Shown piece by piece: positions 15,316 to 33,900 of a DNA stretch of 64,000 nucleotides. This DNA is from Rebecca billardiae RCC1528 (taxonomy: Eukaryota; Protista; Haptophyta). Positions within the stretch are counted from its first letter, which is position 1, and the number at the start of each line of letters is the position of its first letter. Where the stretch lies: contig OZ251236.1 in assembly GCA_965240325.2 (NCBI GenBank), forward strand, positions 1,364,001 through 1,428,000. The letters run 5' to 3'. Position numbers and translations under genes: made by a program. The notes under the pieces are model-generated. The model made no database searches and had not been told where the DNA came from. It saw only the letters and a list, made by a program, of their open reading frames with translations.

Positions 15316-15969
15316 ATCTGATGGCTTTTTGAAACTACAGTTTAATGGATACTGTATACCTTAATACCTGGTGCCACGTGCACTCGGCAATGCCCGAGGT
15401 CGTGGCGGTCGCTGACGAGCCTGACGACGACAGACGAGCCACGAGTTGACTCGCTGAGAGACACTAGCTCCGAGCTACCGGGCTGTCCGGGCCAGAGTTT
15501 TTTTTAAAAAGGATATACGAACTATCGGCGTTCTGGACCGTTACCATACATGACCTGTGACAAGAATAGCATCATCACGTTTCATCGTTTTACCCACCAC
15601 CCATTCAGACGAATCTGAACAGTGAACGATGAGGACTGAGGAGGGGCTACCGTATGCGCTATTAATAGAACGGCTCTGAGATTGATAGTGTTGAGTATCT
15701 CACCATATCTGTGGCTTGGAACGTCGCGGCGAAACCCCACAAACCGCGATCATATTGACGAACGAAGCGCCGTTATTACGGGTAACTTTGCTAATTGGCG
15801 TCGGAGATGGGCCGTGGGCACTCATGGGCGCGCGGGCGTGGGCCCAACCGGCACGGGGTACCCGCACCCGAGCGAGAGCGAGAGCGGGAGCGTCGTGTTC
15901 TCATCTGCGGGGGCCGCCGCGGCCGCCCGACGGAGAGGGTCACCCCACCGCGCCTACGCGCCGGGTGCG

Positions 15970-18900
15970 ATGTGGCTACTCGTGGTGTTTGCCGCGGCAT
16001 TGAGCGCCGCGCAGCTGGGTGGGCATGCCTCCGTCTCGGATGATGGCTCGAGAGTCGCACTCCACGCGACTGAGATGTCGGAGACCTCGCCTCGACAGTC
16101 GCACGCGCCGGCGGCGCGCAAAGTGCCGCAACATGCTGCCGAGACACTGAGCGTCGCCGCGTTCAGCTTCGCGGCTGCAGTGCCCTCTGTCGTGCCCGAC
16201 GCCCCGAAAGACATCCCAGCGAAAGACGTCCCACCGCTGCCAACCCTCAACTTTGCGTCCTCCGCCGTTGTCGGTGCCCCTGCCGAAGCCTTCAGCTTCG
16301 CGCCGCTGAGTGGTCCGGTGCTGAGTATGGCCCCTGGGCCCGTGCCCGTGGTCTCGTCGCCAGCGCATCTGCAGACGACGCCGCCCTCGCCGCAGCCGCC
16401 GCCGCCCTCGCCGCCGCCGCCCTCGCCGCCGCCGCCCTCGCCGAGTGTTCTATCTGTGCTGCAGGCCATCTCTGCGCCCTCCAGCCTCGCGCCGCTGAGT
16501 GGCCCTGCGCTGAGTATGGCCCCTGGGCCCGTGCCCGTGGTCTCGTCGCCAGCGCATCTGCAGCCGCCGCCGCCCTCGCCGCCGCCGCCCTCGCCGCCGC
16601 CGCCCTCGCCGCCGCCGCCCTCGCCGCCCGACACGTCTGTGCCGCCGATCACCTCTGCGCCCGTGCCGGAGCTGATCTCCACAGTCGTCACCCAGCTGCC
16701 GTCCCCGCTGTCGCTGCAGGTGCTCTCCGCGCCCTTCTCGGCCGTCCTCTCCCGCATCGATGCCATGTCGCTGCCCGCCTCGCCGCCCCTGCCGCCGGGC
16801 CCAGGCCCCGGAGAGCCGCCGTTGCCGACCCTGTCCCTCCCGGTCTCCTCGCTGCCCGGCCTGAGCCTGCCGTCCCGGCCCTTGCCCTCGGTCCAGCCGC
16901 CGCCGCCGCCCTCGCCGCTGCCGCTTGCGCTGCAGCCGCCGCCCTCGCCGCCCTCGCCACCGCCGCCCTCGCCGAGTGTTCTGTCTGTGCTGCAGGCCAT
17001 CTCTGCGCCCTCCAGCCTCGCGCCGCTGAGTGGCCCTGCGCTGAGTGTGGCCCGTGGGCCCGTGCCCGTGGTCTCGTCGCCAGCGCAGCTGCAGCCGCCG
17101 CTCTCGCCGCAGCCGCCGCCGCCCTCACCGCCGCCGCCCTCGCCGCCGCCGCTGCTGCTCTCGCCGCAGCCGCCGCCGCCCTCGCCGCCGCCGCCCTCGC
17201 CGCCGCCGCTGCCGCTCTCGCCGCAGCCGCCGCCGCCCTCGCCGCCGCCGCCCTCGCCGCCGCCGCTGCAGCTTGCGCTGCAGCCGCCGCCCTCGCCGCC
17301 CTCGCCGCTCGCTCTGCAGCCGCCGCCCTCGCCGCCCGACACGTCTGTGCCGCCGATCACCTCTGCGCCCGTGCCGGAGCTGCTCTCCACAGTCGTCACC
17401 CAGCTGCCGTCCCCGCTGTCGCTGCAGGTGCTCTCCGCGCCCTTCTCGGCCGTCCTCTCCCGCATCGATGCCATGTCGCTGCCCGCCTCGCCGCCCCTGC
17501 CGCCGGGCCCAGGCCCCGGAGAGCCGCCGTTGCCGACCCTGTCCCTCCCAGTCTCCTCGCTGCCCGGCCTGAGCCTGCCGTCCCGGCCCTTGCCCTCGGT
17601 GCAGTCGCCGCCGCCGCCCTCGCCGCCGCCAGCACCCTCGCAGCCGCCGCCCTCGCCGGCGCAGCCGCCGCCCTCGCCGCCGCCCGCGCCGCAGCCCTCG
17701 CCGCCGCCTCTGCCGCCGCCCGTGTCGCCGCCCTCGCCGCCTCTACCCCCCTCGCCGCCCCCCGGCCCGCTCGGCGGCGCGTTTGCGCGCGTGTACCTCA
17801 CCGCTGCCTCGCCCGGCGCGCTCGTGCACGACTCGGAGGCGTCGGCGTCCAACCGTCACGCCGCCGACTTTGGCTTCTTCCAGCTGGGCGGGGACGAGGC
17901 GGGCGCGCAGGGCGCGCTGGGCGGCGTGCTCGAGGGCTTTGAGGGCGACGACGCGCTGCTCGACCCGGACGGCACCGACGCCTTCGCCCTGTCCAAGCGG
18001 AAGGCGGGCACGGCGCGCGCGTGGGTGCGCACACCCACCGTGTACGCGGACCGCTCGGACGTGCGCGCCACGTACCAGCTGCACGACGCGGCGGGCCGCA
18101 CGGCCGTGGAGCTCTCCGGGCTCAGCGTGTCGCTCACGCTCGCCAACGCCGCCGGCGAGACCGAGCTCACGTCGTGCGCCGCGCCCGACGCGGTCAGCGG
18201 CGTGGGCGAGTGCTCGGGCACGGCTCCGGCCGCGTGGTTCGGGTCGTCGGAGGCGGCGGGCGTCGACGTGACGGTGGCCGTGTCCTACTCGGGCGCGGAG
18301 GTGGCGAGCGTCGAGCTGAGCGGCGCGATCAGCCTCGCGCCCGCGCCCTCGTTCCCCGAGCTGAGCGCCGCGGGCGTGCGCGTCTCCTTCGCCACCTCGC
18401 CCCGCTTCCCCGGCGACGAGGTCGTGGCGAGCGTGTACGCGCACACGGGCGGGTTCCCGCTGAACGCGTACCATCTGAGCGTCGCCTTCAACGCGAGCGT
18501 GCTCGAGCTGGTGTCGGTGGTGGGCGCGGCGGAGTTCAGCGCGCCGGTGACCCTGGAGGGCGAGGGCACGGTCGGCGTGATCTCGGCGGGCGTGCAGGCG
18601 GCCACCACCGAGGCGCAGGTGACGGGCGACGCCGTGCCGCTGTGCACGCTCACGTTCGAGCTGCCCGCGGGCGCGCCGGCCGGCGTCGCGTCGGGCGCGC
18701 TGTCCGTCGTGGTCGAGCAGCTCGTCAACTGGATCAACAACCCGTTCGTGCAGGGCGCGGACGCGCGCGTCGACGACGAGCGCGGCGCGCCGGCGGGCAC
18801 GAGCGGCCAGCTCACCGTCGAGCACGCCGCCGTGCTCGCCATCGCGGCGTTCGTCGCGGACACGGGCAACGCCGTGCGCGTGAACACGGCGCCGCTCACC

Positions 18901-21900
18901 GGCTCGGCCGACGCCGCGAGCGTCGACGCGGTCGTCCTCACCTCGCGCGCGGCGGACGCGCCCGCCGCGGCGAGCGCGAGCGCGTCGTACGAGCTGTCGT
19001 GCGCGCTCGCCAGCGCCGCCGACGGCGCGGCCCTCGCGGTGAGCAGCGGCTGCGCGCTCTCGGCGGGCGCGACGCAGACGAGCGGCACGAGCGGCGCGGC
19101 GGTGCGCGCGCAGCTGGCAGGCGGCGGCTCGGCGCTCGAGGACACCCTCGACGTGCGCGTGTGGTACCCGCGCGACGTGCGAGTCGAGCTCGGCGCGCCG
19201 ACGCTCAGCGCGATCAGCGGGCTGCTCCGCCGCGCGTCGGGCGTCGCGTGCGAGACCGCCGACCCCGCCTCCGCGCAGTCCGCGTACCGCCGCTCGCGCG
19301 TGCGCGTGCTCGCCTCCTTCTCCCTCGACGCCTCCAGCGGCTTTGGCGGCGCGGGCACGACCGCCGCGCTGCTCGGCCTGGAGGCGCAGGGCGGCGTGCT
19401 CGACGTCACGAGGCACGTGAGCGTAGGCAGCTCGGACGCGACGGTCGCCGTCGTCGTGCAGGACAGCGTGAGCGGCGCCGCGTACGTCGAGGCGGTGCCC
19501 GGCGCGCCGAGCGGCGCGCGCGCCAACATCACGCTCGCCTCCGCGCCGGACGCGGGCCTCGCGCCGCCCGCCACCGTCACGCTCGACGCCGACGCGCCGC
19601 TGGGCGTGGACGCGCTCACCGTCCTCGCGTTCACCGGCGCGGCGTGGAGCACCGGCCCGCCCGCCACCACGCCGCGCGCCGGCCCGTTCAGCGCGGCGTT
19701 CAGCCTCGAGCAGCTGCTGAGCGCGGAGGGCGACGAGGCGCGCGTCGTCGCGTGGGCGGCGCTGAGCGACGGCACCGTCGAGCGCGTGCCCCACGCCGAG
19801 CTGCGGCTGAACACGACGACGAGCTCGCTCGAGGTGGCGCGCGGCGCGGGCACGGACGACGCGTGGCGGGCCACCGTCGCGCTCAATGCCGTCTCGCAGG
19901 AGGGCGAGCTGCTGCCCGCCGAGTGGCGCGCGTGCGCCGAGGCGGCGGTCGGCTCGGGCGCGGCGCTCGTGAGCCTCGCGCTGCCCGCGCCCACGGCCGT
20001 GCGGCTGAGCGCCACCGCCACGCGGCTCGCCGACGCGTCGGACGGCGCGTCGCAGCCGCCCGTCAGCCTGCCGAGCAGCGCGACCCTCACCGCGCTCGTC
20101 GACTTTGAGGACGGCAGCTCGATCGACTACTCGGCCGACTCGCGGCTCACGCTCGAGCTGAGCGCCGGGAGCGCGTGCGCGACGCTCAGCGCGCAGACGC
20201 TCGGCATCGCCGCCGGCGCCGCGGCCGACACGGCGTGCGTGGGCACCGGCGCGGTCGCGGTGACGGCCACGCTGGGCGCGTTCAGCCTGCAGGCCACGCT
20301 CTCGCTCGACGTGGTCGCCCTCTCCTCCGTCGAGATCACGCGCACCAACTACCCGACGGACTCGTCGACGGCGTCGGTGACTGCGCTGAGCACGCTCGCG
20401 CTGGTCGGCTGCACCGGCCACTACCAGCGCGCGCAGCTCGGCGCCGTCGCGACGCTGAGCGACGGCAGCAGCGCGGACGTGACCGCGCAGGCCAGCTTCA
20501 CCTCGAGCGACACCGCCGTCGCCGCCGTCGCCGCCTCCGGCTCCGCCGTGCTGCTCGTGCCCGCCGCGGCGGGCACCACCGAGCTCGTCGGCGCGTGGGA
20601 GGGCTTGGCCTCGGCGGCGGCGGCCGTCAGCGTGACCGACACGCCCGTGCAGCCCAGCGCACTCGCGCTCAGCTCGGGCGGGCTGACGAGCTTCGACCTG
20701 GGCAGCGTCGCGGGGAGCTCGGCCGCGACGCTCGCCGCGCGCGTCGAGTTTGACGACGGCTCGGCGTGGCCGGACGCGCTGCTGCTCTCGGCGTGGATGG
20801 CGCCGGCGTCGCTCCTCACGCTCAGCTCGGCGGACTCGGCCGCGGTTGGCGTCGGCGCGGACGGCACGCTCACGCTGCTCGACAACGCCGCCGAGCGCGT
20901 GGAGGTGTCGGCGTCGTGGGCGTGCGCGCCGGCGCAGGTGGCCGCGTCGACGGTGAGCGTCGCGCCCAACCTCGAGCCGAGCGCGCGCGACGTCGACCTC
21001 GGCGCGTCGAGCGGCCTGCAGTTCCAGCCCGACAGCGGCGCGGGCACGCTCGAGGTCTCAGTGCGCGTGCACACGGCCGGCGAGGCGCTCGTCAACTTCC
21101 AGATCGAGATCTCGCTGGACGACAGCCGGCTGCGCGCGAGCGCGTGCGCGGTGCAGCTCTCGTGGGCGGCGTGCACGATCAACGACCCGACCTCACGCGT
21201 GCTTCTCATCGGCGACAACACGCAGGCCACCGACTCGGGCAGCAGCCTGCCCATCGCCACCATCACGTTTGACATCCTCGCCGAGGGCAGCGCGCCCTTC
21301 GAGGCCACGGTCGTCGAGCTCGTCACCGTCTCCTCCGCGGGCGCGGAGACGCGCACGACGGACGCGGAGGTGGTCGCGGGCGCGGGCAGCGCGCTGCTGC
21401 CCGCGCCGCCCGCGCGCCGCCGGCTGCGCGCCGACGGCGCCGCCGTCGTGCCGGCGGCGAGCGCGCGCCGCGCGCCGCTCGGCCGGCCGCGCCGCGGCCT
21501 GCAGAGCTGCGACGCGTGCGCCGCGCAGGTGTACGGCGACGTGTCGGGCGACTGCACCTTCACCTCGTACGACGTGCGCATCGCTTCGCTCGTGATCCTC
21601 GGCTCGGCAGAGTACCCGCTCGAAGACTTGTGCGAGTGGCGCGCGTCGCAGCTCGACCCGAGCCTCGACGGCTCGGTGAGCGCCGTCGATGCGGCCTACC
21701 TGCTGCTCGCGCTCGGCGGCAAGCGCCGCTTTGTGGCGGCGAGCGCGCTCTCGCCCGCGGGCACGCTGTACGGGGCGTCGGTCGGGGCGGAGTGCAGCCT
21801 GAGCGTCACGCTCGTCGACGACAGCTCGACGCCGGTCGACGGCTCGCAGACCTCCGTGCGCGCCGAGGTGTCGTACGCCGCGATCGCCTCGCTCGTCGAC

Positions 21901-24900
21901 GACAGCGGCGGCGTGCGCGAGAGCGTGCTCAACAGCACGGGCGCTGTCGAGCCGGCGCTCTCGCCCGAGGGCAACTGGCTCTTCGAGCTCGAGCCGCTCG
22001 GCGGCGGCGTGTTCGAGCTCGGCTTCCGGCCCAACACGCCGAGCGGCGCGTGGCCGCAGGCGGGCGAGCTGCGCGTCGCGTTCATGGTCGAGACGACCGA
22101 CGCGCTCGGCGGCACGGAGGACGCGCGCGCCGCGCCCTTCCTCGGCTCGTCTGCTGATCCGTACGGCGCCGGCGGCTTCTCCTTCTCGCCGATACTGAGC
22201 GTGGACGTCTCGCTGGGCGCGGTGCCGCCGCCGAGCGCGCCGCCGCCGCCGCCGCCGCCGAGCGCGCCGCCGCCGCCGCCGCCGCCGAGCGTGCCGCCGC
22301 CGCCGCCGCCGAGCGTGCCGCCGCCGCCGCCGCCGAGCATGCCGCCGCCGCCGCCGCCGAGCGTGCCGCCGCCGCCGCCGCCGAGCGTGCCGCCGCCGCC
22401 GCCGCCGAGCGTGCCGCCGCCGCCGCCGCCGAGCGTGCCGCCGCCGCCGCCGCCGAGCGTGCCGCCGCCGCCGCCGCCGAGCGTGCCGCCGCCGCCGCCG
22501 CCGAGCGTGCCGCCGCCGCCGCCGCCGAGCGTGCCGCCGCCGCCGCCGCCGCCGCCGAGCGTGCCGCCTCCGCCTCCGCCGAGCGTGCCGCCTCCGCCGC
22601 CGCCGAGCGTGCCGCCGCCGCCGCCGCCGAGCGTGCCGCCGCCGCCGCCGCCGAGCGTGCCGCCGCCGCCGCCGCCGAGCGTGCCGCCGCCGCCGCCGAG
22701 CGTGCCGCCGCCGCCGCCGCCGAGCGTGCCGCCGCCGCCGCCGCCGAGCGTGCCTCCGCCGCCGCCGCCGAGCGTGCCGCCGCCGCCGCCGCCGAGCGTG
22801 CCTCCGCCGCCGCCGCCGAGCGTGCCGCCGCCGCCGCCGCCGAGCGTGCCGCCGCCGCCGCCGCCGAGCGTGCCGCCGCCGCCGCCGCCGAGCGTGCCTC
22901 CGCCGCCGCCGCCGAGCGTGCCGCCGCCGCCGCCGCCGAGCGTGCCGCCGCCGCCGCCGCCGAGCGTGCCGCCGCCGCCGCCGCCGAGCGTGCCGCCGCC
23001 GCCGCCGCCGAGCGTGCCGCCGCCGCCGCCGCCGAGCGTGCCGCCGCCGCCGCCGCCGCCGCCGAGCGTGCCGCCGTCGCCGCCGCCGAGCGTGCCTCCG
23101 CCGCCGCCGCCGAGCGTGCCTCCGCCGCCGCCGCCGAGCGTGCCGCCGCCGCCGCCGCCGAGCGTGCCGCCGCCGCCGCCGCCGAGCGTGCCGCCACCGC
23201 CGCCGCCGAGCGTGCCGCCGCCGCCGCCGCCGAGCGTGCCTCCGCCGCCGCCGCCGAGCGTGCCGCCGCCGCCGCCGCCGAGCGTGCCGCCGCCACCGCC
23301 GCCGAGCGTGCCGCCGCCGCCATTGGAGCCGCGGCCTCCGCCCTCGCCGCCGCCCCCGCCGCCGCCACCAGGACCGCCACCGGCGCCGCCACCGCCGCCG
23401 CAGCCGCCACCGCCTCCGCCGAGCCCGCCGCCGAGCCCGCCACCAAGACCGCCGCCGCCGCCGCCGCCTGCGCCGCCCCCAAGCCCGCCACCGCCGCCGC
23501 GAACGCAGCCGTTCCCGCCGCCGAGCTCACCGCGCCCGCCTCCCAGCCCGCCGCCACCGCCACCGCCAGCCCCACCCCCGAGCCCGCCGCCCAGCCCGCC
23601 GCCGCCGCCGCCGCTGCCGCCACCGAGCCTGCCGCCGCCGCCGCCGCCGACTCCACCGCCGAACCTACCACCGCCGCCAAGCTTGCCGCCAAGCCTGCCG
23701 CCGCCGCCGCCCTCTCCGCCGCCCTCCCCGCCGCCGAGCCCGCCCCCGCCGCCGTCGCTGCCACCAAGCCCACCGCCGAGCCCGCCACCGAGCCCGCCGC
23801 CACCGAGCCCGCCGCCGCCGCCCACACCTCCGCCGAGCCCACCACCACCGCCGCGCACCGAGCCGTTCCCTCCGCCGAGCCCGCCGAGCCCGCCGCCGAG
23901 CCCGCCGCCGTCGCCTCCGCCGCTGCCGCCGCCGAGCCCGCCGCCGAGCCCGCCGCCGAGCCCGCCGCCGAGCCCGCCGCCGAGCCCGCCGCCGCCGAGC
24001 CCGCCGCCGCCTTCGCCGCCACCCACGCCGCCGCCCTTGCCGCCACCCTCGCCGCCGCCGCCCTCGCCGCCGCCCTCGCCGCCACCGCCCCCACCGCCCA
24101 GCCCGCCGCCCAGCCCGCCGCCACCCTCCCCGCCACCGAGCCCGCCGCCGACCCCGCCGCCCAGCCCGCCGCCCTCGCCGCCGCCGCCCAGCCCGCCGCC
24201 ACCGCCGCCGCCCTCGCCGCCGCCGCCCAGCCCTCCGCCGCCCAGCCCGCCGCCCCCGCTGCGCGAGAACGCCACCACCTTCACCGCGGTCGTGGCCGTG
24301 CCGCAGCAGCTCGCGCTCGGCCCGGAGTGGTGGCTGCCGGACGGCTCGCGGCTCAAGTGGCTGCCCGCCGCGGAGGGCGGCGGCGGCGTGAACTGCTCCG
24401 CGCCCGCGCTCGACGCGTACGGCGCCGAGCAGACGCTCGTCGGCGGCAACGCCACGTTCACCTTCGCCGAGCCCGCGTGGGCGCTGCGCTTCTGCTACTT
24501 CGCGCCCGTCGGCAGCGGCAGCCCGGGCGCGGGCGCGTGGACGGAGGAGCCCACGTACTACCTGGATGCGCAGGAGGTGCTGGGCAGCTCTCGCGCGTTC
24601 GTGGTCGAGGGCGTGCTCTCGCGCGTCACCTTCTCGGGCATCGGCGTCAAGACGGGCGACGCCGCCAAGTTCGTGGCCGCGGCGGACGCCGCCTCGCTCG
24701 GCTGCGCGGACGCGCCCGCCGCGCACGACGGCGGCGCCGCGCTCTCGCTCGTCGGCTCGCGCGTACAGCCGACGTTCCCCGAGCGCACGACGGGGCTGGT
24801 TTTGTGCTACCGCTTCCGCACGCACGCGTACAAGCTGTACGCCGCGATCACGCTCGACGTGTACGGCCTCGGCGGCGCGCCCACCGCGTTCACGTTCGTC

Positions 24901-27900
24901 GCAGGCGTGGCCGAGGCCGTGTCGCTCAGCGGCGAGGGGCTGGCCGCGGGCGACGTGATCAAGTGGGTGCCGGCGGGCGCGAGCAGCTGCGCGCTCACGG
25001 AGGATGCTGCCCTGGGCGGGCTCATCACGCTGCCCACCGCCGGACAGAGCCCCGCCTTCGCCATCGGCTCGGGCGCGCTCGGCCTGCAGCTGTGCTTCAA
25101 GTTTGGCGGCCGGCCGTTCAAACTCTACCCGACGCACACGCTGGACGTGCTGCAACTCACCGGGCCGGTCGCGACGCTCGGCGTGGTGGGTGTGGCCGAG
25201 CGCGTGACGTTCAGCGGCGTCGGGCTCGCGCCCGGCGACCGCGCCTTCTGGCTGCTGCCCGGCGCGGCCACCGCCGCCGCGTGCGCCGAGGACGGCCCCA
25301 GCAGCGCGCGCGCCTCGGCGGTGTCCACCGTGGACGCGCAGCTGGCGGCCAACTTCAGCGTGCCCGCCGCGGGTCTCGGGCACGCGGTGTGTTACGCGCA
25401 CGGCGCCGAGCCGTTCGCGCTGTACGGCGGCATCGCGCTCGACGTGCACGAGGTCTCGTCGCCCGCGGCCTCGCGCGCCGTCGTCGGGCTGCCCGCCGCG
25501 GTCGCCTTTGGCGGCGTGGGCGTGTCGCTCGAAGGCTCCGCCTTCTTCTGGGCGGAGGGCGCGGCCGCCTGCCTCGCGGGCGCGGCCGTCGCGGCGTACG
25601 GCGGCGAGCGCAACATGAGCGGCAGCGTGGGCGCGTTCGAGCTGCTCGCGCCGCCGCCCACCTCCGCGCCGCTCGGGCTGTGCTACCGCTTCGGCCCGTC
25701 CGAGCCGTGGGCGCACTTCCCCGCCGTCTCGCTCGAGCCGCTGCACGTGAGCGCGCCCGCGCTCTCTGCGGTCGTGGTGGGCGTGCCGGAGACGCTGAGC
25801 TTCGAGGGGTACGGGCTGGGCGAGGGCGACACGGCCAAGTGGCTCAGCCCGGGCGCGAGCGACTGCTCGGCCACGCCCGCCGGCTTCGGCGGCGAGCAGG
25901 CCGTCTCGGCGGCCGGCACCGCCACCTTTGACTTCAGCGCCGCCGGCCTCGGCCTCGAGCTCTGTTTCACGTTTGCGGGCGCGCCGCCGCGGCTGTACAG
26001 CGCGGGCTCGGGCGCGGCGCGGCTGCTCGACGCGCACGCGGTGCAGGGCCCCGCGGCCACGGTCGCCGTCGTTGGCGTGGCGGAGGCCGTCCTCTTCACC
26101 GGCGTGGGCATCGGCGAGGGCGACGCCGCGTACTGGGTGCCCGCCGGCACGGCATCGTGCGCCGACGCGCCGCCCTCGTCCGCGTACGGCGGCGCGCAGA
26201 ACGTGAGCGCGGCCGGCGGCGCGAGCTTCACGTTCACGCAGACGACCGCGTCCGAGCCGGACGGGCTCGTGCTGTGCTATGCCTTCGCGGGCGAGCCGTA
26301 CGCGCTCTTCGCCGCCGTCGCGCTCCACGCGTACGACGTGGACGGCCCTGCGTTCACGCGCGCCGTCGTCGGCGTCGCCGAGACGGTGGCCTTCTCCGGG
26401 CACGGCGTGAGCGCGGCCGACTCGGCCAAGTGGGTGCTGGGCAGCGCGACGGACTGCTCCACGACCAACAGGCGGTACGGCGGCGTGCGCACCGTCGACG
26501 CCGCCTCGAGCGTCTCCGTGAGCTTCAGCGCCACCGGCCTTGGCCTGCGGCTGTGTTACGCGTTTGCGGGCGAGCCGTACAAGCTGTACGCGGCCCTCAC
26601 GCTCGACGCGGTGCAGGCGCAGACGCCCGCGTCCACGCTCGCGGTGGTGGGCGTGGCCGAGCCGGTGACGTTCGGCGGGGTCGGGCTGAGCGCGGGCGAC
26701 CAGGCCTTCTGGGCCGCGTTCAACAACACGGCGATCGACTGCGCGGCCGAGCTCAGCGCGGCCGACACGCTGTCGGGCGCGTACGGTGGCGTGCAGACGC
26801 TCGACGGCTCGCTCGGCGCGACGTTCACGTTTGGCGCGGCGCACGCGGACCTGCGGTTGTGCTTCAAGCACGCGGACGAGCCGTACACGTACCGCGCCGG
26901 GCTGCGCCTCGTCGCGGCCGAGGTGCAGGGCCCGGCGTCCACGGTCGCGGTCGCGGGCGTCGCCGAGCCGTTCAGCGTGCAGGGCGTGGGCGTGAGCGCG
27001 GCCGATGCGGGCTACTGGGTGCGCGCCGCGGCGGACTGCCCGGCGGGCGGAGGCGGCGAGCTCGCCGAGCTCGGCGGCGCGTTCGCCGTCGGCGCGGCGG
27101 GCGGCGCCTCCTTCACGCCGACCGTCGCCGCCTTCGGCCTCAGCCTGTGCTACCGCTTCGCCGCGGAGGCGTGGGCGCACTACGCGGACGTGACGCTCGA
27201 CGTGTTCGCTCTCTACTCGTACACGGGCGGTACGCGCGCGGTCGTGGGCAGCGCCAAGGCGGTGACGTTTGTGGGCGACGGCGTGAGCAGCGACGACCGC
27301 GCGTACTGGGCGCCCGCGGGCACCGCCTCGTGCGCGCTGCAGCCGCCGCTCGTGCAGTGGGGCGGCAGCAAGGCGGTGAGCGCGGCCGCGCGCGCGTCGT
27401 TCACATTCCTGCCCGGCACGGGCGCCCTCGGGTACGTTCTTTGCTACCGGTTCGGCGCGGAGCCATACACGCTGTACGCCAACCTGACGCTGGACGTGCT
27501 GCAGATCTCCGGCCCGTTCGTCGTGCTCGCCGTCGTCACCGTCGAGGAGTCGATCACCTTCCAGGGCGTCGGCCTCGGCGAGGGCGACGAGGCGTACTTT
27601 GTGCCGAGGGGCGCGGGCGCGGCCGGCTGCGCCGAGGCCAACCGGATCTCGGGCGACGCGAACGCGCTGATCAGCGGCGGCGTGGGCGCGTTCACGTTCC
27701 CCGCGGTCGCGACGGGCCACCGCCTGTGCTACCGCTTCGGCCCCGCGTCCGAGGGCCTGCCCTGGCGCCAGTTCGCCTCGATCACCCTCTCGGTCACGCT
27801 GCCGGACGACCCGTTCGCGCTCGCCGCCTTCAGCGCCCTCACGCCCACCGGCGCGCCGATCGGGAGCGGGTTTGGGTCGACGAGCGTCACCGTGGTCGGC

Positions 27901-30900
27901 TCCGGCTTCGACCTGGGCGCGCAGACCAAGGCTGGCATCATCTACTGCATCTTCTCCGACGGCGCGTCCGAGGCGCGCGTGCTGGTGGACACGATCACGC
28001 CCACGCAGATCAACTGCACCGCGCCCGCGCTCGACGCCGAGGCGCTGCGCTCGCTCTCGCTCGTCGCGGACGAGACGGACTCGAGCGGCGACCCGCGCGA
28101 GCCCGTCGCGATCACCAACGAGTTCGCCTACTTCGACATGGGCGCGGTGAGCGTCACCGAGCTGATGCCGCCGGGCGCGCCGCAGGGCACGCAGGACGCG
28201 CTGCTCGCGGTGCGCGGCACCAACTTCACAGACTACGGCGGCCTCACCTGCGCCTTCATCGGGCCAAACTTTGGCGGCGGGCGCGTGGAGGTGGCGGCGA
28301 CGCTGCCGGACGCGGGCAGCGCCGAGGTGCTCTGCACCGCGCCGTACGTCTCGCCGCTCGTCACGCCGGGCGACATCGCGGTCGAGCTCTCGCTCAACGG
28401 CCAGGCGTTCACCGACGACGGCGCGCAGTTCACGCTGTACACGGCGCTCGTCTCCGCGGCCGAGCCGAGCGGCGCGCCCGTCGGCGGCGCCGACCCCGCA
28501 GTCACGCTGTACGGCTCGGGCTTCCTCGAGCTCGGCGCGACGCGCTGCTACTACACCTCCGCGGCCGGCGCCGTCGTCGAGTCCGCCGGCGAGGTGCTCG
28601 ACGCCTCGACGGCGACGTGCGACTCGCCCTCGGGCGCGAGCGCAGACGCGTACACCGTCTCGCTCTCGCTCAACGGCGGCGTCAACCTCGTGCCCGTGCT
28701 CTTCGACGAGATCGGCTTCGAGCTGTACGACATGGCGGACGTGGCGGTGACCAAGCTCGTGCCGCCCGGCGGGCCGGTCGCGGGCGGCACGCGCGTCACC
28801 GTCTTCGGCGCGGGCTTCGACGAGTACGGGGACGCGTCGAGCGACAGCAGCCGCCGGCTGTGCTGCGTGCTCGACGGCGCGGGCGCGTGCACGGCGCACG
28901 CGACGCTGCTCGCCGACGCGGCGGACGGCTCGTCGCGCGCGCTGTGCACGGTGCCGCCGGCGCGGCTCGCGGGCAACGTGACGCTCGACATCTCGCTCAA
29001 CAACGGCACGCTCGCCTCCACCACGGACTCGGCCGTGCGCTTCGTGTACCACGACGAGCCGACGCTGCTGAGCGTCAGCCCGGCCGTCGGCGACGCGATC
29101 GGCGGCACGACCGTCACGCTCACGGGCTCGGGCTTCGCCGCGCTCGCCGAGGCGGCCGTGGGGTACGGCGCGGACCCGGCCTCGTTCCTGCGCGTGCGCT
29201 TCGGGCCGACGACCGCCGCGGCGCCGCTCTCGTTCAACGACACGCACATCGTGCAGCTGTCGAGCTGGGGCGCGGAGGGCGGCGCGGCGGTGCGCGTGAG
29301 CCTCAACGGGCGCCAGTTCGCGCCCACCGACGCGGCGGCCGCGCCGACGTTCAGCTTCCAGGGGCTGCACGCGCCCGAGGTCTCCGAGGCCCTCTTCACC
29401 GACGAGGGCACCGCGCTCAAGGTCGTGCTCGACGGGCAGGACACGAACCGCGGCGGCATGGTCGGGCTGGGCGGCTGCTCCGCCGTGCTCGACGACGCGA
29501 GCGTGTCGCTCATCCAGGGCGCCGCGAGCGCCGAGCCGCTCTGCTTCTGGCAGGACAGCTCGACGATCGTCGCGCAGCTCAACTCGCTCACGGCGCTGCG
29601 GCCGGGCGACACCGTCTCGCTCCGAGCCGACGTGATCACGCCGCTGCTGTACACGGGCGCGTGCCCCGGCACGCGCGGGCTGTGCGCGTCGGGCTCGGCC
29701 GAGATCGACGCCGACTTCCCGTGCGCCTCGTGCCCCACGCCCGTCGCGGACATCTCCGGCCCGAGCCAGATCTCGCAGTGCCCGAACGAGGTGCTGCGCC
29801 TCGACGGCACCGCGTCGTCCGGCGGCGGCGCCGTGCCGCTCACGTACACGTGGCGCGTCGACCCGAGCCGCTCCGACTTTGCGGACGCGATCAACGCGCA
29901 GCTCGCGACGCAGACCGGCCCGGTGGTCGAGCTCAGCGCGCTGCAGGGCGACAGCTACGTCTTCCTGCTGCGCGTCTCGTCCTTCCTCGGGCGGCGCTCG
30001 GCGCTGGTCGAGTGGCCCGTCTCGCGCGGCGGCGGCGCGTCGCCCGCGCTCGCCATCGACGGCCCGAGCGTGCAGCTCGCGCGCCCGTCGGAGGAGCTGC
30101 TGCTGCAGGGCGTCGCGACGCTCGCCGACTGCTGGCCCGTGGCGCAGGACGCCGACGTCGTCTTCTCGTGGAGCTACCTCGGCTCGAGCGTGAGCGCGAG
30201 CGGCGCGGCCGCGGGGCTCGCGCTGCCGCTCGACGAGCCGGACAAGTCCGGGCTGCTCATCCCCGCGTTCACGCTGCTCTCGGGCTACTCGTACGAGCTG
30301 CAGCTCGACGCGTACATGCTGGCCGAGCCGAGCGCGGCGACGAGCGCGAGCGTGACGGTGTCCGTCGAGGCGCAGGAGCTGCAGATCATCATCGCGGGCA
30401 GCGACCGGCAGACCTCGGCGGACGCGGCCGTCTCGATCGACGCGTCCAACTCGTTCGACCCCAACGTGCCCACGCTGGAGGGCAAGAGCGGCCTGAGCTT
30501 CGCGTGGGCGGTGGCGCTGAGCGCGAACGGCACGGCGGGCGAGGCGGTAGCGTTCGACGCCGCGCTCGGCGTCGACCTGACGACGAGCGTGCTCGCGCTG
30601 CCCGCGAGCGCGCTGCCCGCGGGCGAGTACGTCGTGACGCTCACCCTCTCGAAGCCGGGCATCGCCGCCGCGTCCTCCTCGCTCGAGCTGCAGGTGGTCG
30701 GGGCGTCGAACTTGCCGACGATCACCTTCGAGCCGCTCACCGCGCTCAAGTACAACCCGACGTGGGAGCTGCCGACCGAGCGCGTCACCGTCTCCGCTAG
30801 CGTGGGCGGCCAGGGCCAGAGGTCGTACGCGTGGCGCGCGTACGTGAACGTGGACGGGGTGCGCTCAGCGTCGGCGCTCGACCTCGCCGACACGGCGACG

Positions 30901-33900
30901 ACGACGACGGGCGCGGACAAGGCGAACCTCGCGTTCCGCAGCGGCGTGCTCACGCCGGGCGCGCAGTACACCTTTGAGCTCACCGCGAGCGTCGGCGGCG
31001 CGGACGCGGTCGGCAGCGTGGACGTGCTCATCAACAAGCCGCCGTTCGGCGGCTCGCTCAGCGTCGAGCCGGCGTCGGGCGGCAGCGCGCTCGAGACGGC
31101 GTTCTCGCTGCAGGCGCTCAGCTGGACCGACGACGCCTCCGACCTCCCGCTCGAGTACGCGTTCTCGTACACGTTCGCGGCGGACGGCGCGGGCGCGCTG
31201 CCCAAGGCGCTCTCCGCGACCGTGCGCTCGCCCACGCTGCTCGACGCGTACCTGCCCGAGGGCGCGCTCACGCTGCGCGTGCGCGTCTTCGACTTCTGGG
31301 GCTCGTCGGTCGACGCGACCGCGGGCGCGACGGTGCTCGCGCCCTCGTCCATCGACTGCGACGCGATCATCGCGCAGGCGCAGGGGCAGGTGGCGATTGG
31401 CAACGTGGCGCGCTCGATGCAGCTGCTCGCAGCGCTCGCGCAGGACGGCAGCTGCACCAACTCCGGCGCGCGCCGCCGCCGGCTGGGCGAGGCGGCGCGG
31501 CCCGTGCCGCGCGGCGCGCCGCGCCACGCGCGGCGCGCGCTGCAGGCGGCCAACGCCACCAACGGGACCGCGGCCAACTTCACGTGCGACGTGGCCGAGT
31601 CGGTGGTCGAGGAGATGCTGACGATCGTGGGCAGCGCGGGCAACGCCTCCGTCTCGACCGCCACCGGCCGGAAGCAGCTCGCCGGCGCGATCGCCGACAT
31701 CTTGCTCGGCACAAACTCGAGCGAGCTCACGCCGTGCGCGCAGCTCGAGGCGCTCTCGCTCGCGCTCTCGCTCATCCTCGACTCGACGAGCTCGGGGATG
31801 GACGAGAGCGCCGCCAGCGCGCTCTTCTCGTCGGTGCTCTCCGTGCTCGGCGCCAACGCGAGCGCGCTCGACCCGACCGTGCTGGGCGCGATCAACACGC
31901 TCGCGACCGACTCCGCGTCCGGCCTGGCCGCCTCGTTCCTCACGGGCAAGGTGGCGGGGGAGGAGTTCGACGAGATCACGGGGGACGGGCTGGCGCTCTC
32001 GGCCGGGCGCTCGTCCTCCGTCGCCAACTCGAGCATCGCCGCGCCCGGCGGCAGCGGCGGCATCGCCGTGCCGATCAGCGCGCTCGACGACGTGCAGAAC
32101 GCCTCGGTGGTGGACGTGGTGCAGTACCTGTTTGCGCGCAACACGAACGGCGACCCGACGGCGCAGCTCGGGCTGGGCGAGCTGCAGACGCCGGTGTACT
32201 CGATCACCTTCTCCTCGGCGTCCACGGGATCCGAGCTCTCCGTCGCCGGCCTCGACGAGCCCATCGTGATCGCGATCCCGCTCACCGCGTCGCACGAGCT
32301 GCAGTACGGCGCGTCGGGCGTGTGCGCAGAGTTCGACCGCTGCAACGGCCGCGGCGCGTGCGTGCTCGAGCCGCACAACGCGAGCGCGCTCGCCCTCGAC
32401 CCGAACGCGACGGCGCCCGGCGCGGCGTGCGTGTGCGACGCGCCGTGGTACGGCCCGAGCTGCCTCGAGCGCGCCGTGTGCCACTTCTGGGACGTGGCGG
32501 AGGGCGCGTGGTCGACCGACGGCTGCTCGACCGTGCCCACGCCGCCGGGCGGCGACAACACGACGCTGTACTGCGCGTGCACGCACCTCACCGAGTTCGG
32601 CGGCGTGAGCGTGCCCACCAGCCCCGCCGAGTTCCGCGAGGACGCGTCGGCGGTGAACGTGAACACGCTCTCCACCGACGACGCGACCGCCATCTTCACG
32701 ACGCCGCCCGATCAGCTGCTGGCGGAAAACCCGTCAATCTTCATCCTCGTGTTCACGCTGCTCGGCTGCACCGTGCTGTTCGTGATCCTCGGCTACGTCA
32801 AGGACGCGCACGACGACCGGGTGCGCGCGTCCAAGGTGGCGGCGGGCGAGGCGGCCGAGGAGGACAAGCCCGAGGCCGCGGAGGACAAGATGGAGCGGCG
32901 GCTCGACGAGCTCGACCGGCGCGTGCTCGAGGCGCGCGCCAAGGCGGCACGCGTGATCTCCTCGCGGGTGAAGGGCAAGGTGGTGCGCACGCAGACGGCC
33001 AAGGCGCGCGAGCTGGCCAAGGAGGACCCGGCGGCGGCGCGCCGCTCGATCCAGGAGATGGAGGCCGAGCGCGAGCAGCTCGCGCAGGAGCAGGCGCGCG
33101 CCGACAGCGCCAAGCCCAAGGACCACTACCTCACGCGCGCGATGCGCGCGATGCGCAGCGCGGTCGAGTCCGACCACACCGTGCTCGGCCTCTACTACGG
33201 CCACGACCGCGAGATCCGGCGGCCGCAGCTCGTGATGATCCTGATGACGCTGCTGATGCTCGAGGTGCTGATCGAGTGCATGCTCTTCACGCCCGACGAC
33301 CCCGCGGACGCGGGCAAGCCCGTCAACCTCGTCGTGATCGTCTTCAACGCCTTCATCTGCGCGGGCCTCGCCGCGCCCGCCATCGTCATCATGAAGCTGC
33401 TCTGGAACTGGGGCTACGAGAAGCCCGCGCCCATACTCCGGCGGCTCGGCCGGATCGCGACCAAGGCGACCGCGCCGGGCGCGAAGGCGAAGCGCAAGAA
33501 CATGATCCGCCGCTCCATGAACATGGGAGACCTGACCTCCCCGAGGCCGGGGACTGCGGGCAGCGGCCGCTCGACGGGCAGCGACGGAGCCGCCGCGAGC
33601 GCGGGCGTGCGGCTCGGCGCGCCCGCCGGCGCCGCCGCGCCTGACCGCGCCAAGCCGGCGCCGCCGCCACCGCCCTCGCCGCCGCGTCCCACGCCCCCTG
33701 GCCGATCGGGGCCGCGCTCGCCCTTCGCCCGCCCGCCGGCGCGCCTGCGGCCGGCGGCCGTCGCGCCGGTCAGCCCCGAGGTCGACGGCGACGACGACAT
33801 CGAGTCTGTGCGGCTGGCGGACTCGCCGCGGGGCACGCCGCCCGGCAGCCCGGCGGGCGGCAGCGGCGCGGGCTCGCCGGCGTCGCCCTCGGTGCGCGTC

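What the first reader, a model, noticed from the sequence alone, without database searches (positions are those of the whole stretch)
21040..21720. Cohesin - basic cleavage linker - dockerin: a possible detachable or polymerising clasp
Seen: a cohesin-like domain (TLEVSVRVHTAGEALVNFQIEISLDDSRL...IATITFDIL) is followed by RRRL (21415-21426) and RRGLQ (21490-21504). Next comes a dockerin-like pair of Ca-binding loops, YGDVSGDCTFTSYDV and LDPSLDGSVSAVDAAYLL. Known: cohesin and dockerin bind each other Ca-dependently with very high mechanical strength, and multibasic motifs are proprotein-convertase sites. Inference: after cleavage the head could be held on the stalk non-covalently, exchanged or cross-linked between molecules, giving a cellulosome-like assembly system on a eukaryotic surface. 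Caveat: 21448-21528 (GTGCC...GCAG, 81 nt) might be an in-frame intron, though RRRL would remain.
Basis: partly seen in the sequence, partly recalled or inferred. Interest (0 to 1): 0.8.

Follow-up and report, generated by a model that had tools for sequence, protein, structure and literature searches.

The report
Cohesin, twin basic sites, dockerin joint
A giant surface receptor of a haptophyte-type alga contains a true cohesin and a true calcium-loop dockerin joined by an exposed loop with two conserved protease-type basic sites, so the protein is probably nicked there and held together without a covalent bond; neither cutting nor binding has been shown.

Summary
Bases 20968-21741 encode one conserved unit: cohesin, a loop of about 35 residues, then a type I dockerin. 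It lies in frame in a 6,474-codon ORF.

Pfam does not hit the window's own copy. However, 43 of 70 homologous units hit Cohesin and 38 of 70 hit Dockerin_1. The family profile finds solved dockerins at E 8e-9. An AlphaFold model (pLDDT 91, pTM 0.87) matches cohesins at Z 12-13 and dockerins at Z 9.5 (1.8 A over 67 residues).

The basic motifs are not chance:
- Arginines in the loop cluster far beyond composition.
- 65 of 95 family loops carry two clusters at fixed positions.
- The window has both clusters. Both also read RRxL, the plant S1P/SBT6.1 motif, and one is a strict furin site.

The proposed 81-nt intron is rejected, because it would remove site B and a Cys kept in about 90% of units.

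Cleavage, Coh-Doc binding and any cellulosome-like polymerisation remain untested, and no RNA run was listed.

The scan had already found this cassette on other pieces of this genome. New at this locus:
- The cassette sits in a REJ-GPS-TM receptor.
- A second twin-RRxL loop lies further down the ectodomain.

Relatives include haptophytes, a green alga and choanoflagellate-type cadherins.

The parts
20968..21003 (+). Conserved N-terminal motif NLxPxxxDVDLG of the unit (window reads NLEPSARDVDLG)
   Evidence: Family frequencies are N 98%, L 95%, P 82%, D 97%, D 100% and G 97% over 98 aligned units. It is more conserved than the cohesin core. Its role is unknown.
20974..21405 (+). Cohesin domain (Coh2 of this protein), a beta jelly-roll
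   Evidence: AF2 pLDDT is 92-98 over model residues 9-152. Foldseek's top 50 hits are almost all cohesins at prob 1.0. VIA-align gives Z 13.4-12.0 with rmsd 2.4-3.0 A over about 127 residues to 4ums, 5nrk, 6kgc and 1ohz_A. PF00963 hits 43 of 70 homologous units, best E 2.1e-14.
21376..21381 (+). Conserved Ala-Gly that closes the cohesin and marks the linker start
   Evidence: A is 93% and G 94% in the family. Site A lies 12-14 residues after it in most units.
21406..21507 (+). Exposed linker between cohesin and dockerin
   Evidence: pLDDT is 55-80 in model residues 151-190, against above 94 on both sides. The choanoflagellate unit shows the same pattern. Arg is 13.7% in family linkers against 3.8% in the parent proteins.
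21415..21426 (+). Basic site A: RRRL (ORF residues 1912-1915), an RRxL/dibasic motif
   Evidence: The last Arg sits 14 residues after the conserved AG, in the family's main position bin. A1 shows ARRRRL conserved in metagenomic relatives.
21484..21501 (+). Basic site B: RPRRGL, combining a strict furin-type RPRR (1935-1938) with an overlapping RRGL (1937-1940)
   Evidence: It is one of only two R-x-[KR]-R motifs in the whole ORF. In the family alignment the last Arg of this cluster is the most conserved linker residue (about 90%). The family's second cluster lies 15-20 residues before the GD of loop 1.
21448..21528 (+).
   Evidence: Removing it would delete site B, Cys187 (69%) and Cys190 (87-90% conserved). 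Homologues carry the equivalent segment. One of them is a transcriptome-derived choanoflagellate protein whose unit is 100% identical to P0084 through the linker.
21508..21741 (+). Type I dockerin domain (CxxC lead-in, two Ca loops, three helices, KRRF tail)
   Evidence: The local dockerin HMM hits here only in the whole window. The A2 profile matches PDB type I dockerins at E 7.9e-9 to 5e-7 across both loops. VIA-align gives 4fl4_A Z 9.5, rmsd 1.8 A over 67 of 68 residues, and 2ccl_B Z 9.1, rmsd 1.6 A over 62 of 62. PF00404 hits 38 of 70 units.
21535..21573 (+). Ca-binding loop 1, GDVSGDCTFTSYD
   Evidence: The EF-hand-like ligand positions 1, 3, 5 and 12 read D, S, D, D. Family frequencies there are D 99%, N/D/S 64/26/10%, D/N 81/18% and D 100%. 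Cys at position 6 is 88% and Phe at position 8 is 85%.
21655..21690 (+). Ca-binding loop 2, DPSLDGSVSAVD
   Evidence: Positions 1, 3, 5, 9 and 12 read D, S, D, S, D. The family has D 84%, D/T/N/S 55/19/16/9%, D/N 57/35%, D/N/T/S 60/13/11/5% and D 100%. The window uses minority Ser ligands.
18403..18675 (+). Second, TMEM132-type cohesin (Coh1) in the same protein, with no dockerin of its own
   Evidence: The cohesin HMM built from A2 gives E 5e-7. hhalign of A2 against this region gives prob 88%, E 3e-6. BLASTP of Coh1 against Coh2 gives E 2e-4. It lies upstream of the Ig_TMEM132_4th/5th hits.
31471..31542 (+). Second twin basic loop of the ectodomain (ARRRRL, then RRAL 19 residues later), inside or just after the Pfam REJ envelope and before the EGF/GPS region
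   Evidence: The 5,544-residue ectodomain has four RRxL motifs against 0.45 expected. They fall in two pairs, this one and the Coh-Doc linker.
32581..32601 (+). GPS motif (THLTEFG) of the same protein, a separate self-cleaving type of non-covalent joint near the membrane
   Evidence: Pfam GPS E 3.8e-7 and REJ E 1.1e-42.

Best explanation
Bases 20968-21741 encode one copy of a conserved eukaryotic module: a cohesin, a loop of about 35 residues, and a type I dockerin.

Shown here:
- Both domains have the bacterial cohesin and dockerin folds and belong to those families by profile.
- The Ca-ligand positions are occupied by oxygen donors.
- The loop is predicted to be flexible.
- The loop carries two basic clusters at family-conserved positions. 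Site A is RRRL, 14 residues after the cohesin's closing Ala-Gly. Site B is RPRRGL, just before the dockerin's CxxC lead-in.

Inferred:
- The dockerin sits on its own neighbouring cohesin in cis, in a Ca2+-dependent way.
- During secretion a Golgi subtilase cuts at one or both sites. In this alga it would be an S1P/SBT6.1-like enzyme reading RRxL, or a kexin/furin-like enzyme reading the dibasic or RxRR motif. Cutting at both sites would remove a spacer of about 22 residues.
- The N-terminal TMEM132-like adhesive head then stays attached only through the non-covalent Coh:Doc contact. What it is attached to is the dockerin, polyproline stalk, TIG/REJ/GPS region and membrane anchor.
- The joint would act as a calcium- and force-sensitive coupling, for release, shedding or exchange of the head. 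This is analogous to furin-nicked Notch and to the GAIN and SEA junctions.

The same protein has a GPS site and a second twin-RRxL loop nearer the membrane.
For: Family size and unity of the module: 307 representatives at E<=1e-3, with most matches spanning query residues 2-265 in one stretch, and 97 full units.

Domain identity:
- Pfam Cohesin hits 43 of 70 units and Dockerin_1 hits 38 of 70.
- The profile matches PDB dockerins at 7.9e-9 and cohesins at about 1e-3.
- AF2 gives pLDDT 91.1.
- Foldseek returns cohesins at prob 1.0.
- VIA gives Z 13.4 for cohesin and Z 9.5 at 1.8 A for dockerin.

Cis packing: pTM is 0.87 for 271 residues, of which the cohesin alone is 144. That value requires confident mutual placement of the two domains. 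A choanoflagellate unit gives pTM 0.85.

Linker exposure: pLDDT 55-80.

Site conservation:
- R-x-[KR]-R occurs in 48 of 95 unique linkers, against 11.6 +/- 3.0 in composition-preserving shuffles (maximum 23).
- Its density is 1.51 per 100 aa, against 0.064 in the parent proteins.
- A dibasic motif occurs in 86 of 95 linkers.
- 65 of 95 linkers have two separated clusters at fixed distances from the AG and GD landmarks.
- RR(x)L occurs in 24 of 32 close relatives, and strict furin-type sites in 33 of 62 distant ones.

In this ORF Arg is 3.0% of the ectodomain. All four RRxL motifs (0.45 expected) fall in two short loops.

RRXL is described as the motif cut by the Golgi protease SBT6.1/S1P (PMC11371470).
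Against: - There is no direct evidence of cleavage, of Ca binding or of Coh-Doc binding.
- No RNA run was listed for this locus.
- I could not read the model's coordinates, so it is untested whether the predicted contact uses the canonical cohesin 8-3-6-5 face.
- The ESM Atlas search matched only the cohesin half, so it gives no independent support for the packing.
- The two AF2 runs share one alignment and are not independent.
- Eight of 95 linkers have no dibasic motif and 22 have only one cluster, so double cutting cannot be universal.
- The window's loops use Ser where most relatives have Asn or Asp, and the copy falls below Pfam's thresholds.
- A convertase of the required specificity was not identified in this genome. 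There are only unverified first-reader notes of subtilisins.
Confidence: 0.45

Rival explanations
1. Uncut cis clasp. The cohesin and dockerin form a permanent folded super-domain within an intact chain. The loop is never cleaved. Its arginine clusters do something else, for example binding acidic polysaccharides of the cell covering, or acting as slack that pays out about 15 nm when force opens the clasp.
For: pTM is high for the intact chain in two family members. 30 of 95 linkers lack the two-cluster arrangement. No cleavage data exist. The motif flavour varies between RRxL, RRL and RxRR, which would also fit a looser electrostatic role.
Against: The clusters sit at fixed distances from domain landmarks and are ordered into convertase-type motifs, well beyond what Arg content gives. 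A charge patch would not need fixed positions or a following Leu. The same twin RRxL pattern recurs in an unrelated loop of the same ectodomain.
Confidence: 0.25
2. Trans assembly. After or without cutting, the dockerin binds a cohesin of another molecule (Coh1 or Coh2). This would chain or cross-link the giant proteins into a surface lattice, cellulosome-like reading.
For: The protein has two cohesins but one dockerin, so one cohesin is always free. Earlier notes report that paralogues in this genome carry several cassettes per chain (not tested here). From my own knowledge, bacterial and archaeal proteins with both modules can self-associate.
Against: Coh2 and Doc are adjacent one-to-one in 97 units, and AF2 packs them in cis. 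There are no dockerin-bearing enzymes or multi-cohesin scaffoldins in the window. No binding data exist.
Confidence: 0.15
3. Artefact. The motifs are a by-product of the 75% G+C content (CGC/CGG codons). Alternatively, part of the linker is an intron, and the cohesin and dockerin resemblance is superficial.
For: G+C is 75% in this part of the window, and long spurious ORFs occur on the other strand. The window copy has no direct Pfam hit.
Against: Arg is only 3.0% of the ectodomain, yet four RR pairs sit within 27 residues here. The same sites occur in AT-richer relatives that use Lys, Asn and Ile freely, with sites such as RTKRQ and RLKRQ. The folds match at Z 13 and Z 9.5. The candidate intron holds conserved residues.
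Confidence: 0.02

Closest known systems
Bacterial type I cohesin-dockerin pairs of cellulosomes (for example Clostridium thermocellum CipA cohesin with Xyn10B dockerin, PDB 1ohz/2ccl)
   Same: The two folds are the same (Z 12.1 to 1ohz_A; Z 9.1, rmsd 1.6 A to 2ccl_B). The duplicated EF-hand-like Ca loops, each followed by a helix, are the same.
   Different: Here both modules are adjacent in one eukaryotic chain, one-to-one, with a conserved loop of basic sites between them. No enzymes or multi-cohesin scaffold are present. The dockerin has extra conserved cysteines (a CxxC lead-in and a Cys in loop 1). After cutting, force would pass through the cohesin N-terminus and the dockerin C-terminus.
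TMEM132 ectodomain cassette and the choanoflagellate/sponge cadherins coherin, lefftyrin and hedgling (Sanchez-Pulido and Ponting 2018, PMC6030884)
   Same: Ig_TMEM132_4th/5th hits lie downstream of a cohesin (Coh1) in the same protein. Distant relatives of the unit are cadherin giants with the same Ig domains.
   Different: [quoted passage not shown] This family adds a second cohesin plus a dockerin and the basic-site loop. The window protein ends in REJ-GPS-TM-EF-hand rather than a TMEM132 tail.
Proteolytically nicked, non-covalently held ectodomain junctions: furin-cut Notch heterodimerisation domain, GAIN/GPS of adhesion GPCRs and polycystin-1, SEA domain of mucins (comparison from general knowledge)
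   Same: The proposed logic is the same: cut in the secretory pathway, stay associated, separate under force or ligand. The same protein also carries a GPS motif.
   Different: The holding contact would be a Ca-dependent cohesin-dockerin pair. Two sites would excise a spacer. Cutting would be done by an external subtilase, not by autoproteolysis.
Plant S1P/SBT6.1 substrates with RRXL sites (pro-RALF23 and others; PMC11371470)
   Same: The motif is the same, RRxL, in a secretory-pathway protein. The window has RRRL and RRGL, and 24 of 32 close relatives have RR(x)L.
   Different: Those are small peptide precursors. Here the sites lie between two domains that probably stay bound. No S1P orthologue was examined in this genome.
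Non-cellulosomal cohesin of Archaeoglobus fulgidus (PDB 2xdh)
   Same: It is a cohesin used outside any cellulosome, and it matches the model at Z 12.0. From memory, its parent protein also carries a dockerin.
   Different: It is an archaeal protein with no convertase-type loop and no adhesion-receptor context.

Membership tests
Cohesin (Pfam PF00963) | Nine-stranded beta jelly-roll fold of cohesins | tested here: met
   Foldseek's top 50 hits are nearly all cohesins at prob 1.0. VIA gives Z 13.4-12.0 with rmsd 2.4-3.0 A over about 127 residues.
Cohesin (Pfam PF00963) | Direct match of this copy to the Pfam model | tested here: not met
   No hit at E<=1 for the window copy.
Cohesin (Pfam PF00963) | Homology through the family (relatives of this copy match the model) | tested here: met
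   43 of 70 aligned units hit PF00963, best 2.1e-14. The profile finds PDB cohesins 3l8q and 7uvg at about 1e-3.
Cohesin (Pfam PF00963) | Binds a dockerin | not testable with these tools
   The only support is AF2 packing of the two domains in one body (pTM 0.87). The interface was not inspected.
Dockerin type I (Pfam PF00404) | Two repeats, each an EF-hand-like loop (O-ligands at positions 1, 3, 5, 9, 12) followed by a helix | tested here: met
   Loop 1 reads D-S-D-T-D and loop 2 reads D-S-D-S-D at those positions. D at position 12 is 100% conserved in both. The model has helices at 206-216, 229-234 and 245-255.
Dockerin type I (Pfam PF00404) | Dockerin fold | tested here: met
   4fl4_A gives Z 9.5, rmsd 1.8 A over 67 of 68 residues. 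2ccl_B gives Z 9.1, rmsd 1.6 A over 62 of 62.
Dockerin type I (Pfam PF00404) | Sequence-profile membership | tested here: met
   The family profile matches PDB type I dockerins at 7.9e-9 to 5e-7. 38 of 70 units hit PF00404. The window copy alone gives no hit.
Dockerin type I (Pfam PF00404) | Ca2+-dependent folding and cohesin binding | not testable with these tools
   Needs ITC or pull-down with and without EDTA.
Proprotein-convertase / S1P substrate | Recognition motif present (R-x-K/R-R, dibasic, or RRxL) | tested here: met
   RPRR at 1935-1938, RRRL at 1912-1915 and RRGL at 1937-1940.
Proprotein-convertase / S1P substrate | Motif conserved in position and enriched beyond composition | tested here: met
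   48 of 95 against 11.6 in shuffles, two fixed positions, and 24-fold density over the parent proteins.
Proprotein-convertase / S1P substrate | Site exposed in a secretory-pathway protein | tested here: inconclusive
   The low-pLDDT loop is a prediction. The signal-peptide-like MWLLVVFAAALSAA at 15970 and the hydrophobic segment after GPS were read from the sequence. No dedicated predictor was run.
Proprotein-convertase / S1P substrate | Actually cleaved, and a matching protease present in the organism | not testable with these tools
   No proteomic or RNA data. Subtilisin genes in this genome are only unverified notes.
Cellulosome | Scaffoldin with several cohesins that recruits dockerin-bearing enzymes | tested here: not met
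   The window holds two cohesins and one dockerin, all in one non-enzymatic chain.
TMEM132-like adhesion cassette | Cohesin followed by the TMEM132 Ig (BIG) domains | tested here: met
   Coh1 lies at 18403-18675. Ig_TMEM132_4th scores 30.6 bits, above the cut-off of 27. The 5th scores 19.8 bits, below its cut-off of 28.

The most novel reading that the evidence does not exclude
The cohesin, twin-basic-site loop and dockerin unit is an ancient eukaryotic junction. It is shared by haptophytes, green algae and choanoflagellate-type cadherins. A Golgi subtilase cuts it, and it then works as a Ca2+-dependent, force-rated non-covalent coupling. That would make it a third class of primed ectodomain joint beside GAIN and SEA. 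It would also identify the lost cis partner of the orphan cohesin in animal TMEM132 proteins.
Probability: 0.3. Interest if true: 0.8.

Novelty: new variant of a known kind. Interest (0 to 1): 0.6.

Why it matters
Cohesin-dockerin is among the mechanically strongest known protein pairs, and it is studied almost only as bacterial cellulosome glue.

Here the pair is built into eukaryotic adhesion receptors, with a conserved protease-type loop between the partners. That gives a concrete, testable idea for how giant surface proteins are assembled, shed or force-gated.

It also bears on the human TMEM132 family, which is linked to hearing loss and panic disorder. The cohesin of those proteins has no known partner (PMC6030884). 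In the related cadherin giants and algal proteins, a dockerin lies in the same chain.

The papers I could search do not describe the cassette or its basic-site loop.

Tried and rejected
- Direct Pfam scan of the window copy: no cohesin or dockerin hit at E<=1.
- phmmer of the copy against PDB sequences: only chance-level hits.
- RNA evidence: no run was listed, so read laying was not used and the splice question was settled by homology only.
- Word-index protein search: four short metagenomic fragments. Their contigs are low-coverage, fragmented assemblies and added little beyond a TMEM132 Ig hint upstream.
- ESM Atlas shape search: it matched only the cohesin half (TM about 0.45), so it gives no independent check of the cis packing.
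Only Diacronema lutheri, Prymnesium parvum, a Prymnesium MAG, Cymbomonas tetramitiformis and an Acanthoecidae transcriptome were identified.
- Two papers (Peer 2009, Nichols 2012) are not held.
- In-frame intron at 21448-21528: rejected.
- Composition artefact: rejected.
- A strictly furin-type reading: weakened in favour of dibasic/RRxL for the algal branch.
Full report
**What is there**

The finding lies in frame inside one open reading frame, 15682-35106 on the + strand (6,474 codons). A likely start is the signal-peptide-like MWLLVV at 15970. The window is very G+C-rich, about 75% here. It also shows long spurious ORFs on the other strand, so ORF length alone proves nothing. Pfam hits along this frame do show a real gene: Ig_TMEM132_4th and 5th, several TIG, REJ (1.1e-42), GPS (3.8e-7) and an EF-hand near the end.

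**Is it cohesin plus dockerin?**

The window's copy gives no Pfam hit even at E<=1 and nothing by phmmer against PDB sequences. It does belong to a large family.
- A full HMMER scan of 1.84 billion representatives found 307 proteins at E<=1e-3 and 149 at E<=1e-10.
- Most of these match query residues 2-265 as a single stretch.
- Local phmmer found 97 complete units among the top 150 proteins, often two or three per giant protein.

I aligned the window unit with 69 of these units (A2).
- 43 of the 70 hit Pfam Cohesin (best 2.1e-14) and 38 hit Dockerin_1 (best 7.3e-8).
- The A2 profile finds solved type I dockerins at 7.9e-9 to 5e-7, aligned across both calcium loops. It finds cohesins at about 1e-3.

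AlphaFold2 with A2 gives mean pLDDT 91.1 and pTM 0.87.
- Foldseek's top 50 PDB hits are almost all cohesins at probability 1.0.
- The Foldseek-independent VIA-align search gives cohesins at Z 13.4-12.0 (rmsd 2.4-3.0 A over about 127 residues).
- On model residues 193-263 it gives dockerins 4fl4_A (Z 9.5, 1.8 A over 67 of 68 residues) and 2ccl_B (Z 9.1, 1.6 A over 62 of 62).

The calcium-ligand positions are occupied. Loop 1 reads D, S, D, T, D and loop 2 reads D, S, D, S, D at positions 1, 3, 5, 9 and 12. Position 12 is Asp in 100% of relatives. The Ser residues are minority choices (5-10% in the family), which probably explains the missing direct Pfam hit. So both domain calls are correct.

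**The linker**

Model residues 151-190 have pLDDT 55-80, between blocks above 94. In the family the linker has a median length of 48 residues and is 13.7% Arg, against 3.8% in the parent proteins. The arginines are organised, not just abundant.
- R-x-[KR]-R occurs in 48 of 95 unique linkers, against 11.6 +/- 3.0 after shuffling each linker (maximum 23 in 500 shuffles).
- [KR]R occurs in 86 of 95, against 58.7 in shuffles.
- The density of R-x-[KR]-R is 1.51 per 100 residues, against 0.064 in the parent proteins.
- 65 of 95 linkers have two separated clusters. The first ends 12-14 residues after a nearly invariant Ala-Gly that closes the cohesin. The second ends 15-20 residues before the GD of loop 1, just ahead of a conserved CxxC.

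The window has both clusters in register: RRRL (21415-21426) and RPRRGL (21484-21501).

I tested that.
- Among units at least 33% identical to the window, RR(x)L occurs in 24 of 32 and strict furin-type sites in 14 of 32.
- Among more distant units, strict furin-type sites occur in 33 of 62 and RR(x)L in 18 of 62.

The common denominator is therefore a dibasic pair at two fixed places, with a lineage-specific flavour. RRXL is described as the motif cut by the Golgi subtilase SBT6.1/S1P in plants (PMC11371470). Both window motifs fit it, and RPRR also fits furin.

**Composition artefact?**

No. Arg is only 3.0% of the 5,544-residue ectodomain, yet four RR pairs lie within 27 residues of this linker. 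The ORF has only two R-x-[KR]-R motifs. All four ectodomain RRxL motifs (0.45 expected) fall in two pairs: this linker, and a second short loop at 31471-31542 (ARRRRL, then RRAL 19 residues on), inside or just after the Pfam REJ envelope and before the EGF/GPS region. My rough estimate is that four random motifs forming two such pairs has a probability of about 3e-4. Relatives with ordinary composition carry sites such as RTKRQ, RLKRQ and RYRRQ at the same place.

**The intron caveat**

The proposed intron 21448-21528 would remove site B, Cys187 (69% conserved) and Cys190 (87-90% conserved). The equivalent segment is present in metagenomic relatives. It is also present in a transcriptome-derived choanoflagellate protein, whose unit is 100% identical to P0084 through the linker. 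I reject the intron. No RNA run was listed for the window itself, so this rests on homology.

**Cis or trans?**

pTM 0.87 for 271 residues cannot be reached by the 144-residue cohesin alone. The dockerin must be confidently placed against it. A choanoflagellate unit modelled the same way gives pLDDT 89.2 and pTM 0.85, with a disordered linker at 165-200.

The support has three limits. The two runs share one alignment. I could not read coordinates or PAE. The ESM Atlas search matched only the cohesin half. So cis docking is a prediction, and its geometry is unchecked.

The protein also has a second, TMEM132-type cohesin at 18403-18675 and only one dockerin in the whole window. One cohesin is therefore free whatever the dockerin does.

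**Relatives and context**

Named relatives are Diacronema lutheri (48% identity over all matched stretches; 52% for its better-matching unit), Prymnesium parvum, a Prymnesium MAG and the green alga Cymbomonas tetramitiformis. The distant three-unit giants include an Acanthoecidae choanoflagellate protein. These are cadherin proteins with TMEM132 Ig domains and a Pfam dockerin. The window's organism is therefore a haptophyte-type alga. The species is undetermined, and no near-identical protein was found.

Sanchez-Pulido and Ponting described the cohesin of TMEM132 and of coherins. [quoted passage not shown] I found no paper in the library describing the cohesin-dockerin cassette or its basic loop in eukaryotes.

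**Earlier findings of this scan**

The scan has met the same cassette on at least seven other pieces of this genome, and its follow-ups reached similar readings. New at this locus:
- The cassette sits in a membrane receptor with REJ, GPS and an EF-hand.
- A second twin RRxL loop is present.
- The intron has been tested and rejected.
- The sites have been quantified by position.

**Most likely mechanism**

- Shown: two genuine domains and an exposed loop with two conserved basic sites.
- Inferred: the dockerin sits on its neighbouring cohesin. A Golgi subtilase (S1P-like or kexin/furin-like) nicks or excises the loop. The TMEM132-like head is then held on the dockerin, polyproline stalk, REJ-GPS and membrane part only by a Ca-dependent non-covalent contact. 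That contact can release or exchange under force or low calcium.

I give the full chain of inference about 0.45. The rivals are an uncut clasp (0.25), trans assembly (0.15) and artefact (0.02).

It is not a cellulosome, because it has no enzymes and no multi-cohesin scaffold. It works more like furin-cut Notch or the GAIN and SEA junctions, with a different holding device.

Noticed in passing
window 31471-31542: A second loop with twin RRxL motifs (ARRRRL, then RRAL 19 residues later) lies inside or just after the Pfam REJ envelope and before the EGF/GPS region. Together with the Coh-Doc linker it accounts for all four RRxL motifs of the 5,544-residue ectodomain. It may be cut by the same protease.
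   Followed up: partly
window 20968-21003: The motif NLxPxxxDVDLG at the very start of the unit is 95-100% conserved in 98 aligned units. That is more than any part of the cohesin core. It is not a feature I know from bacterial cohesins. It might be a metal site or the contact with the previous Ig domain.
   Followed up: no
window 32581-32601 and 29002-33000: A canonical GPS motif (CACTHLTEFG) follows a strong REJ domain and is followed by hydrophobic segments and an EF-hand. This is a polycystin-1/PKDREJ-like rear half joined to a TMEM132-like front half.
   Followed up: partly
window 22216-24258: About 680 residues of almost pure PPPPPPS/PPPSPPP repeats at 87% G+C form a stalk right after the dockerin and one further beta-rich domain.
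   Followed up: no
window 24259-28000: About a dozen tandem domains of about 100 residues, each with a conserved LCY[RA]F-like strand and a Cys pair. They have no Pfam match.
   Followed up: no
window 34700-35106: After the single EF-hand hit the ORF runs into Ala/Arg/Pro-rich low-complexity sequence. This looks like read-through of an intron or the 3' UTR, so the true C-terminus is probably elsewhere.
   Followed up: no
P0084 residues 3812-3869 (choanoflagellate-type relative): A Kunitz/BPTI protease-inhibitor domain lies about 100 residues after a Coh-Doc unit in a cadherin giant. This is curious, given the protease-site loop.
   Followed up: no
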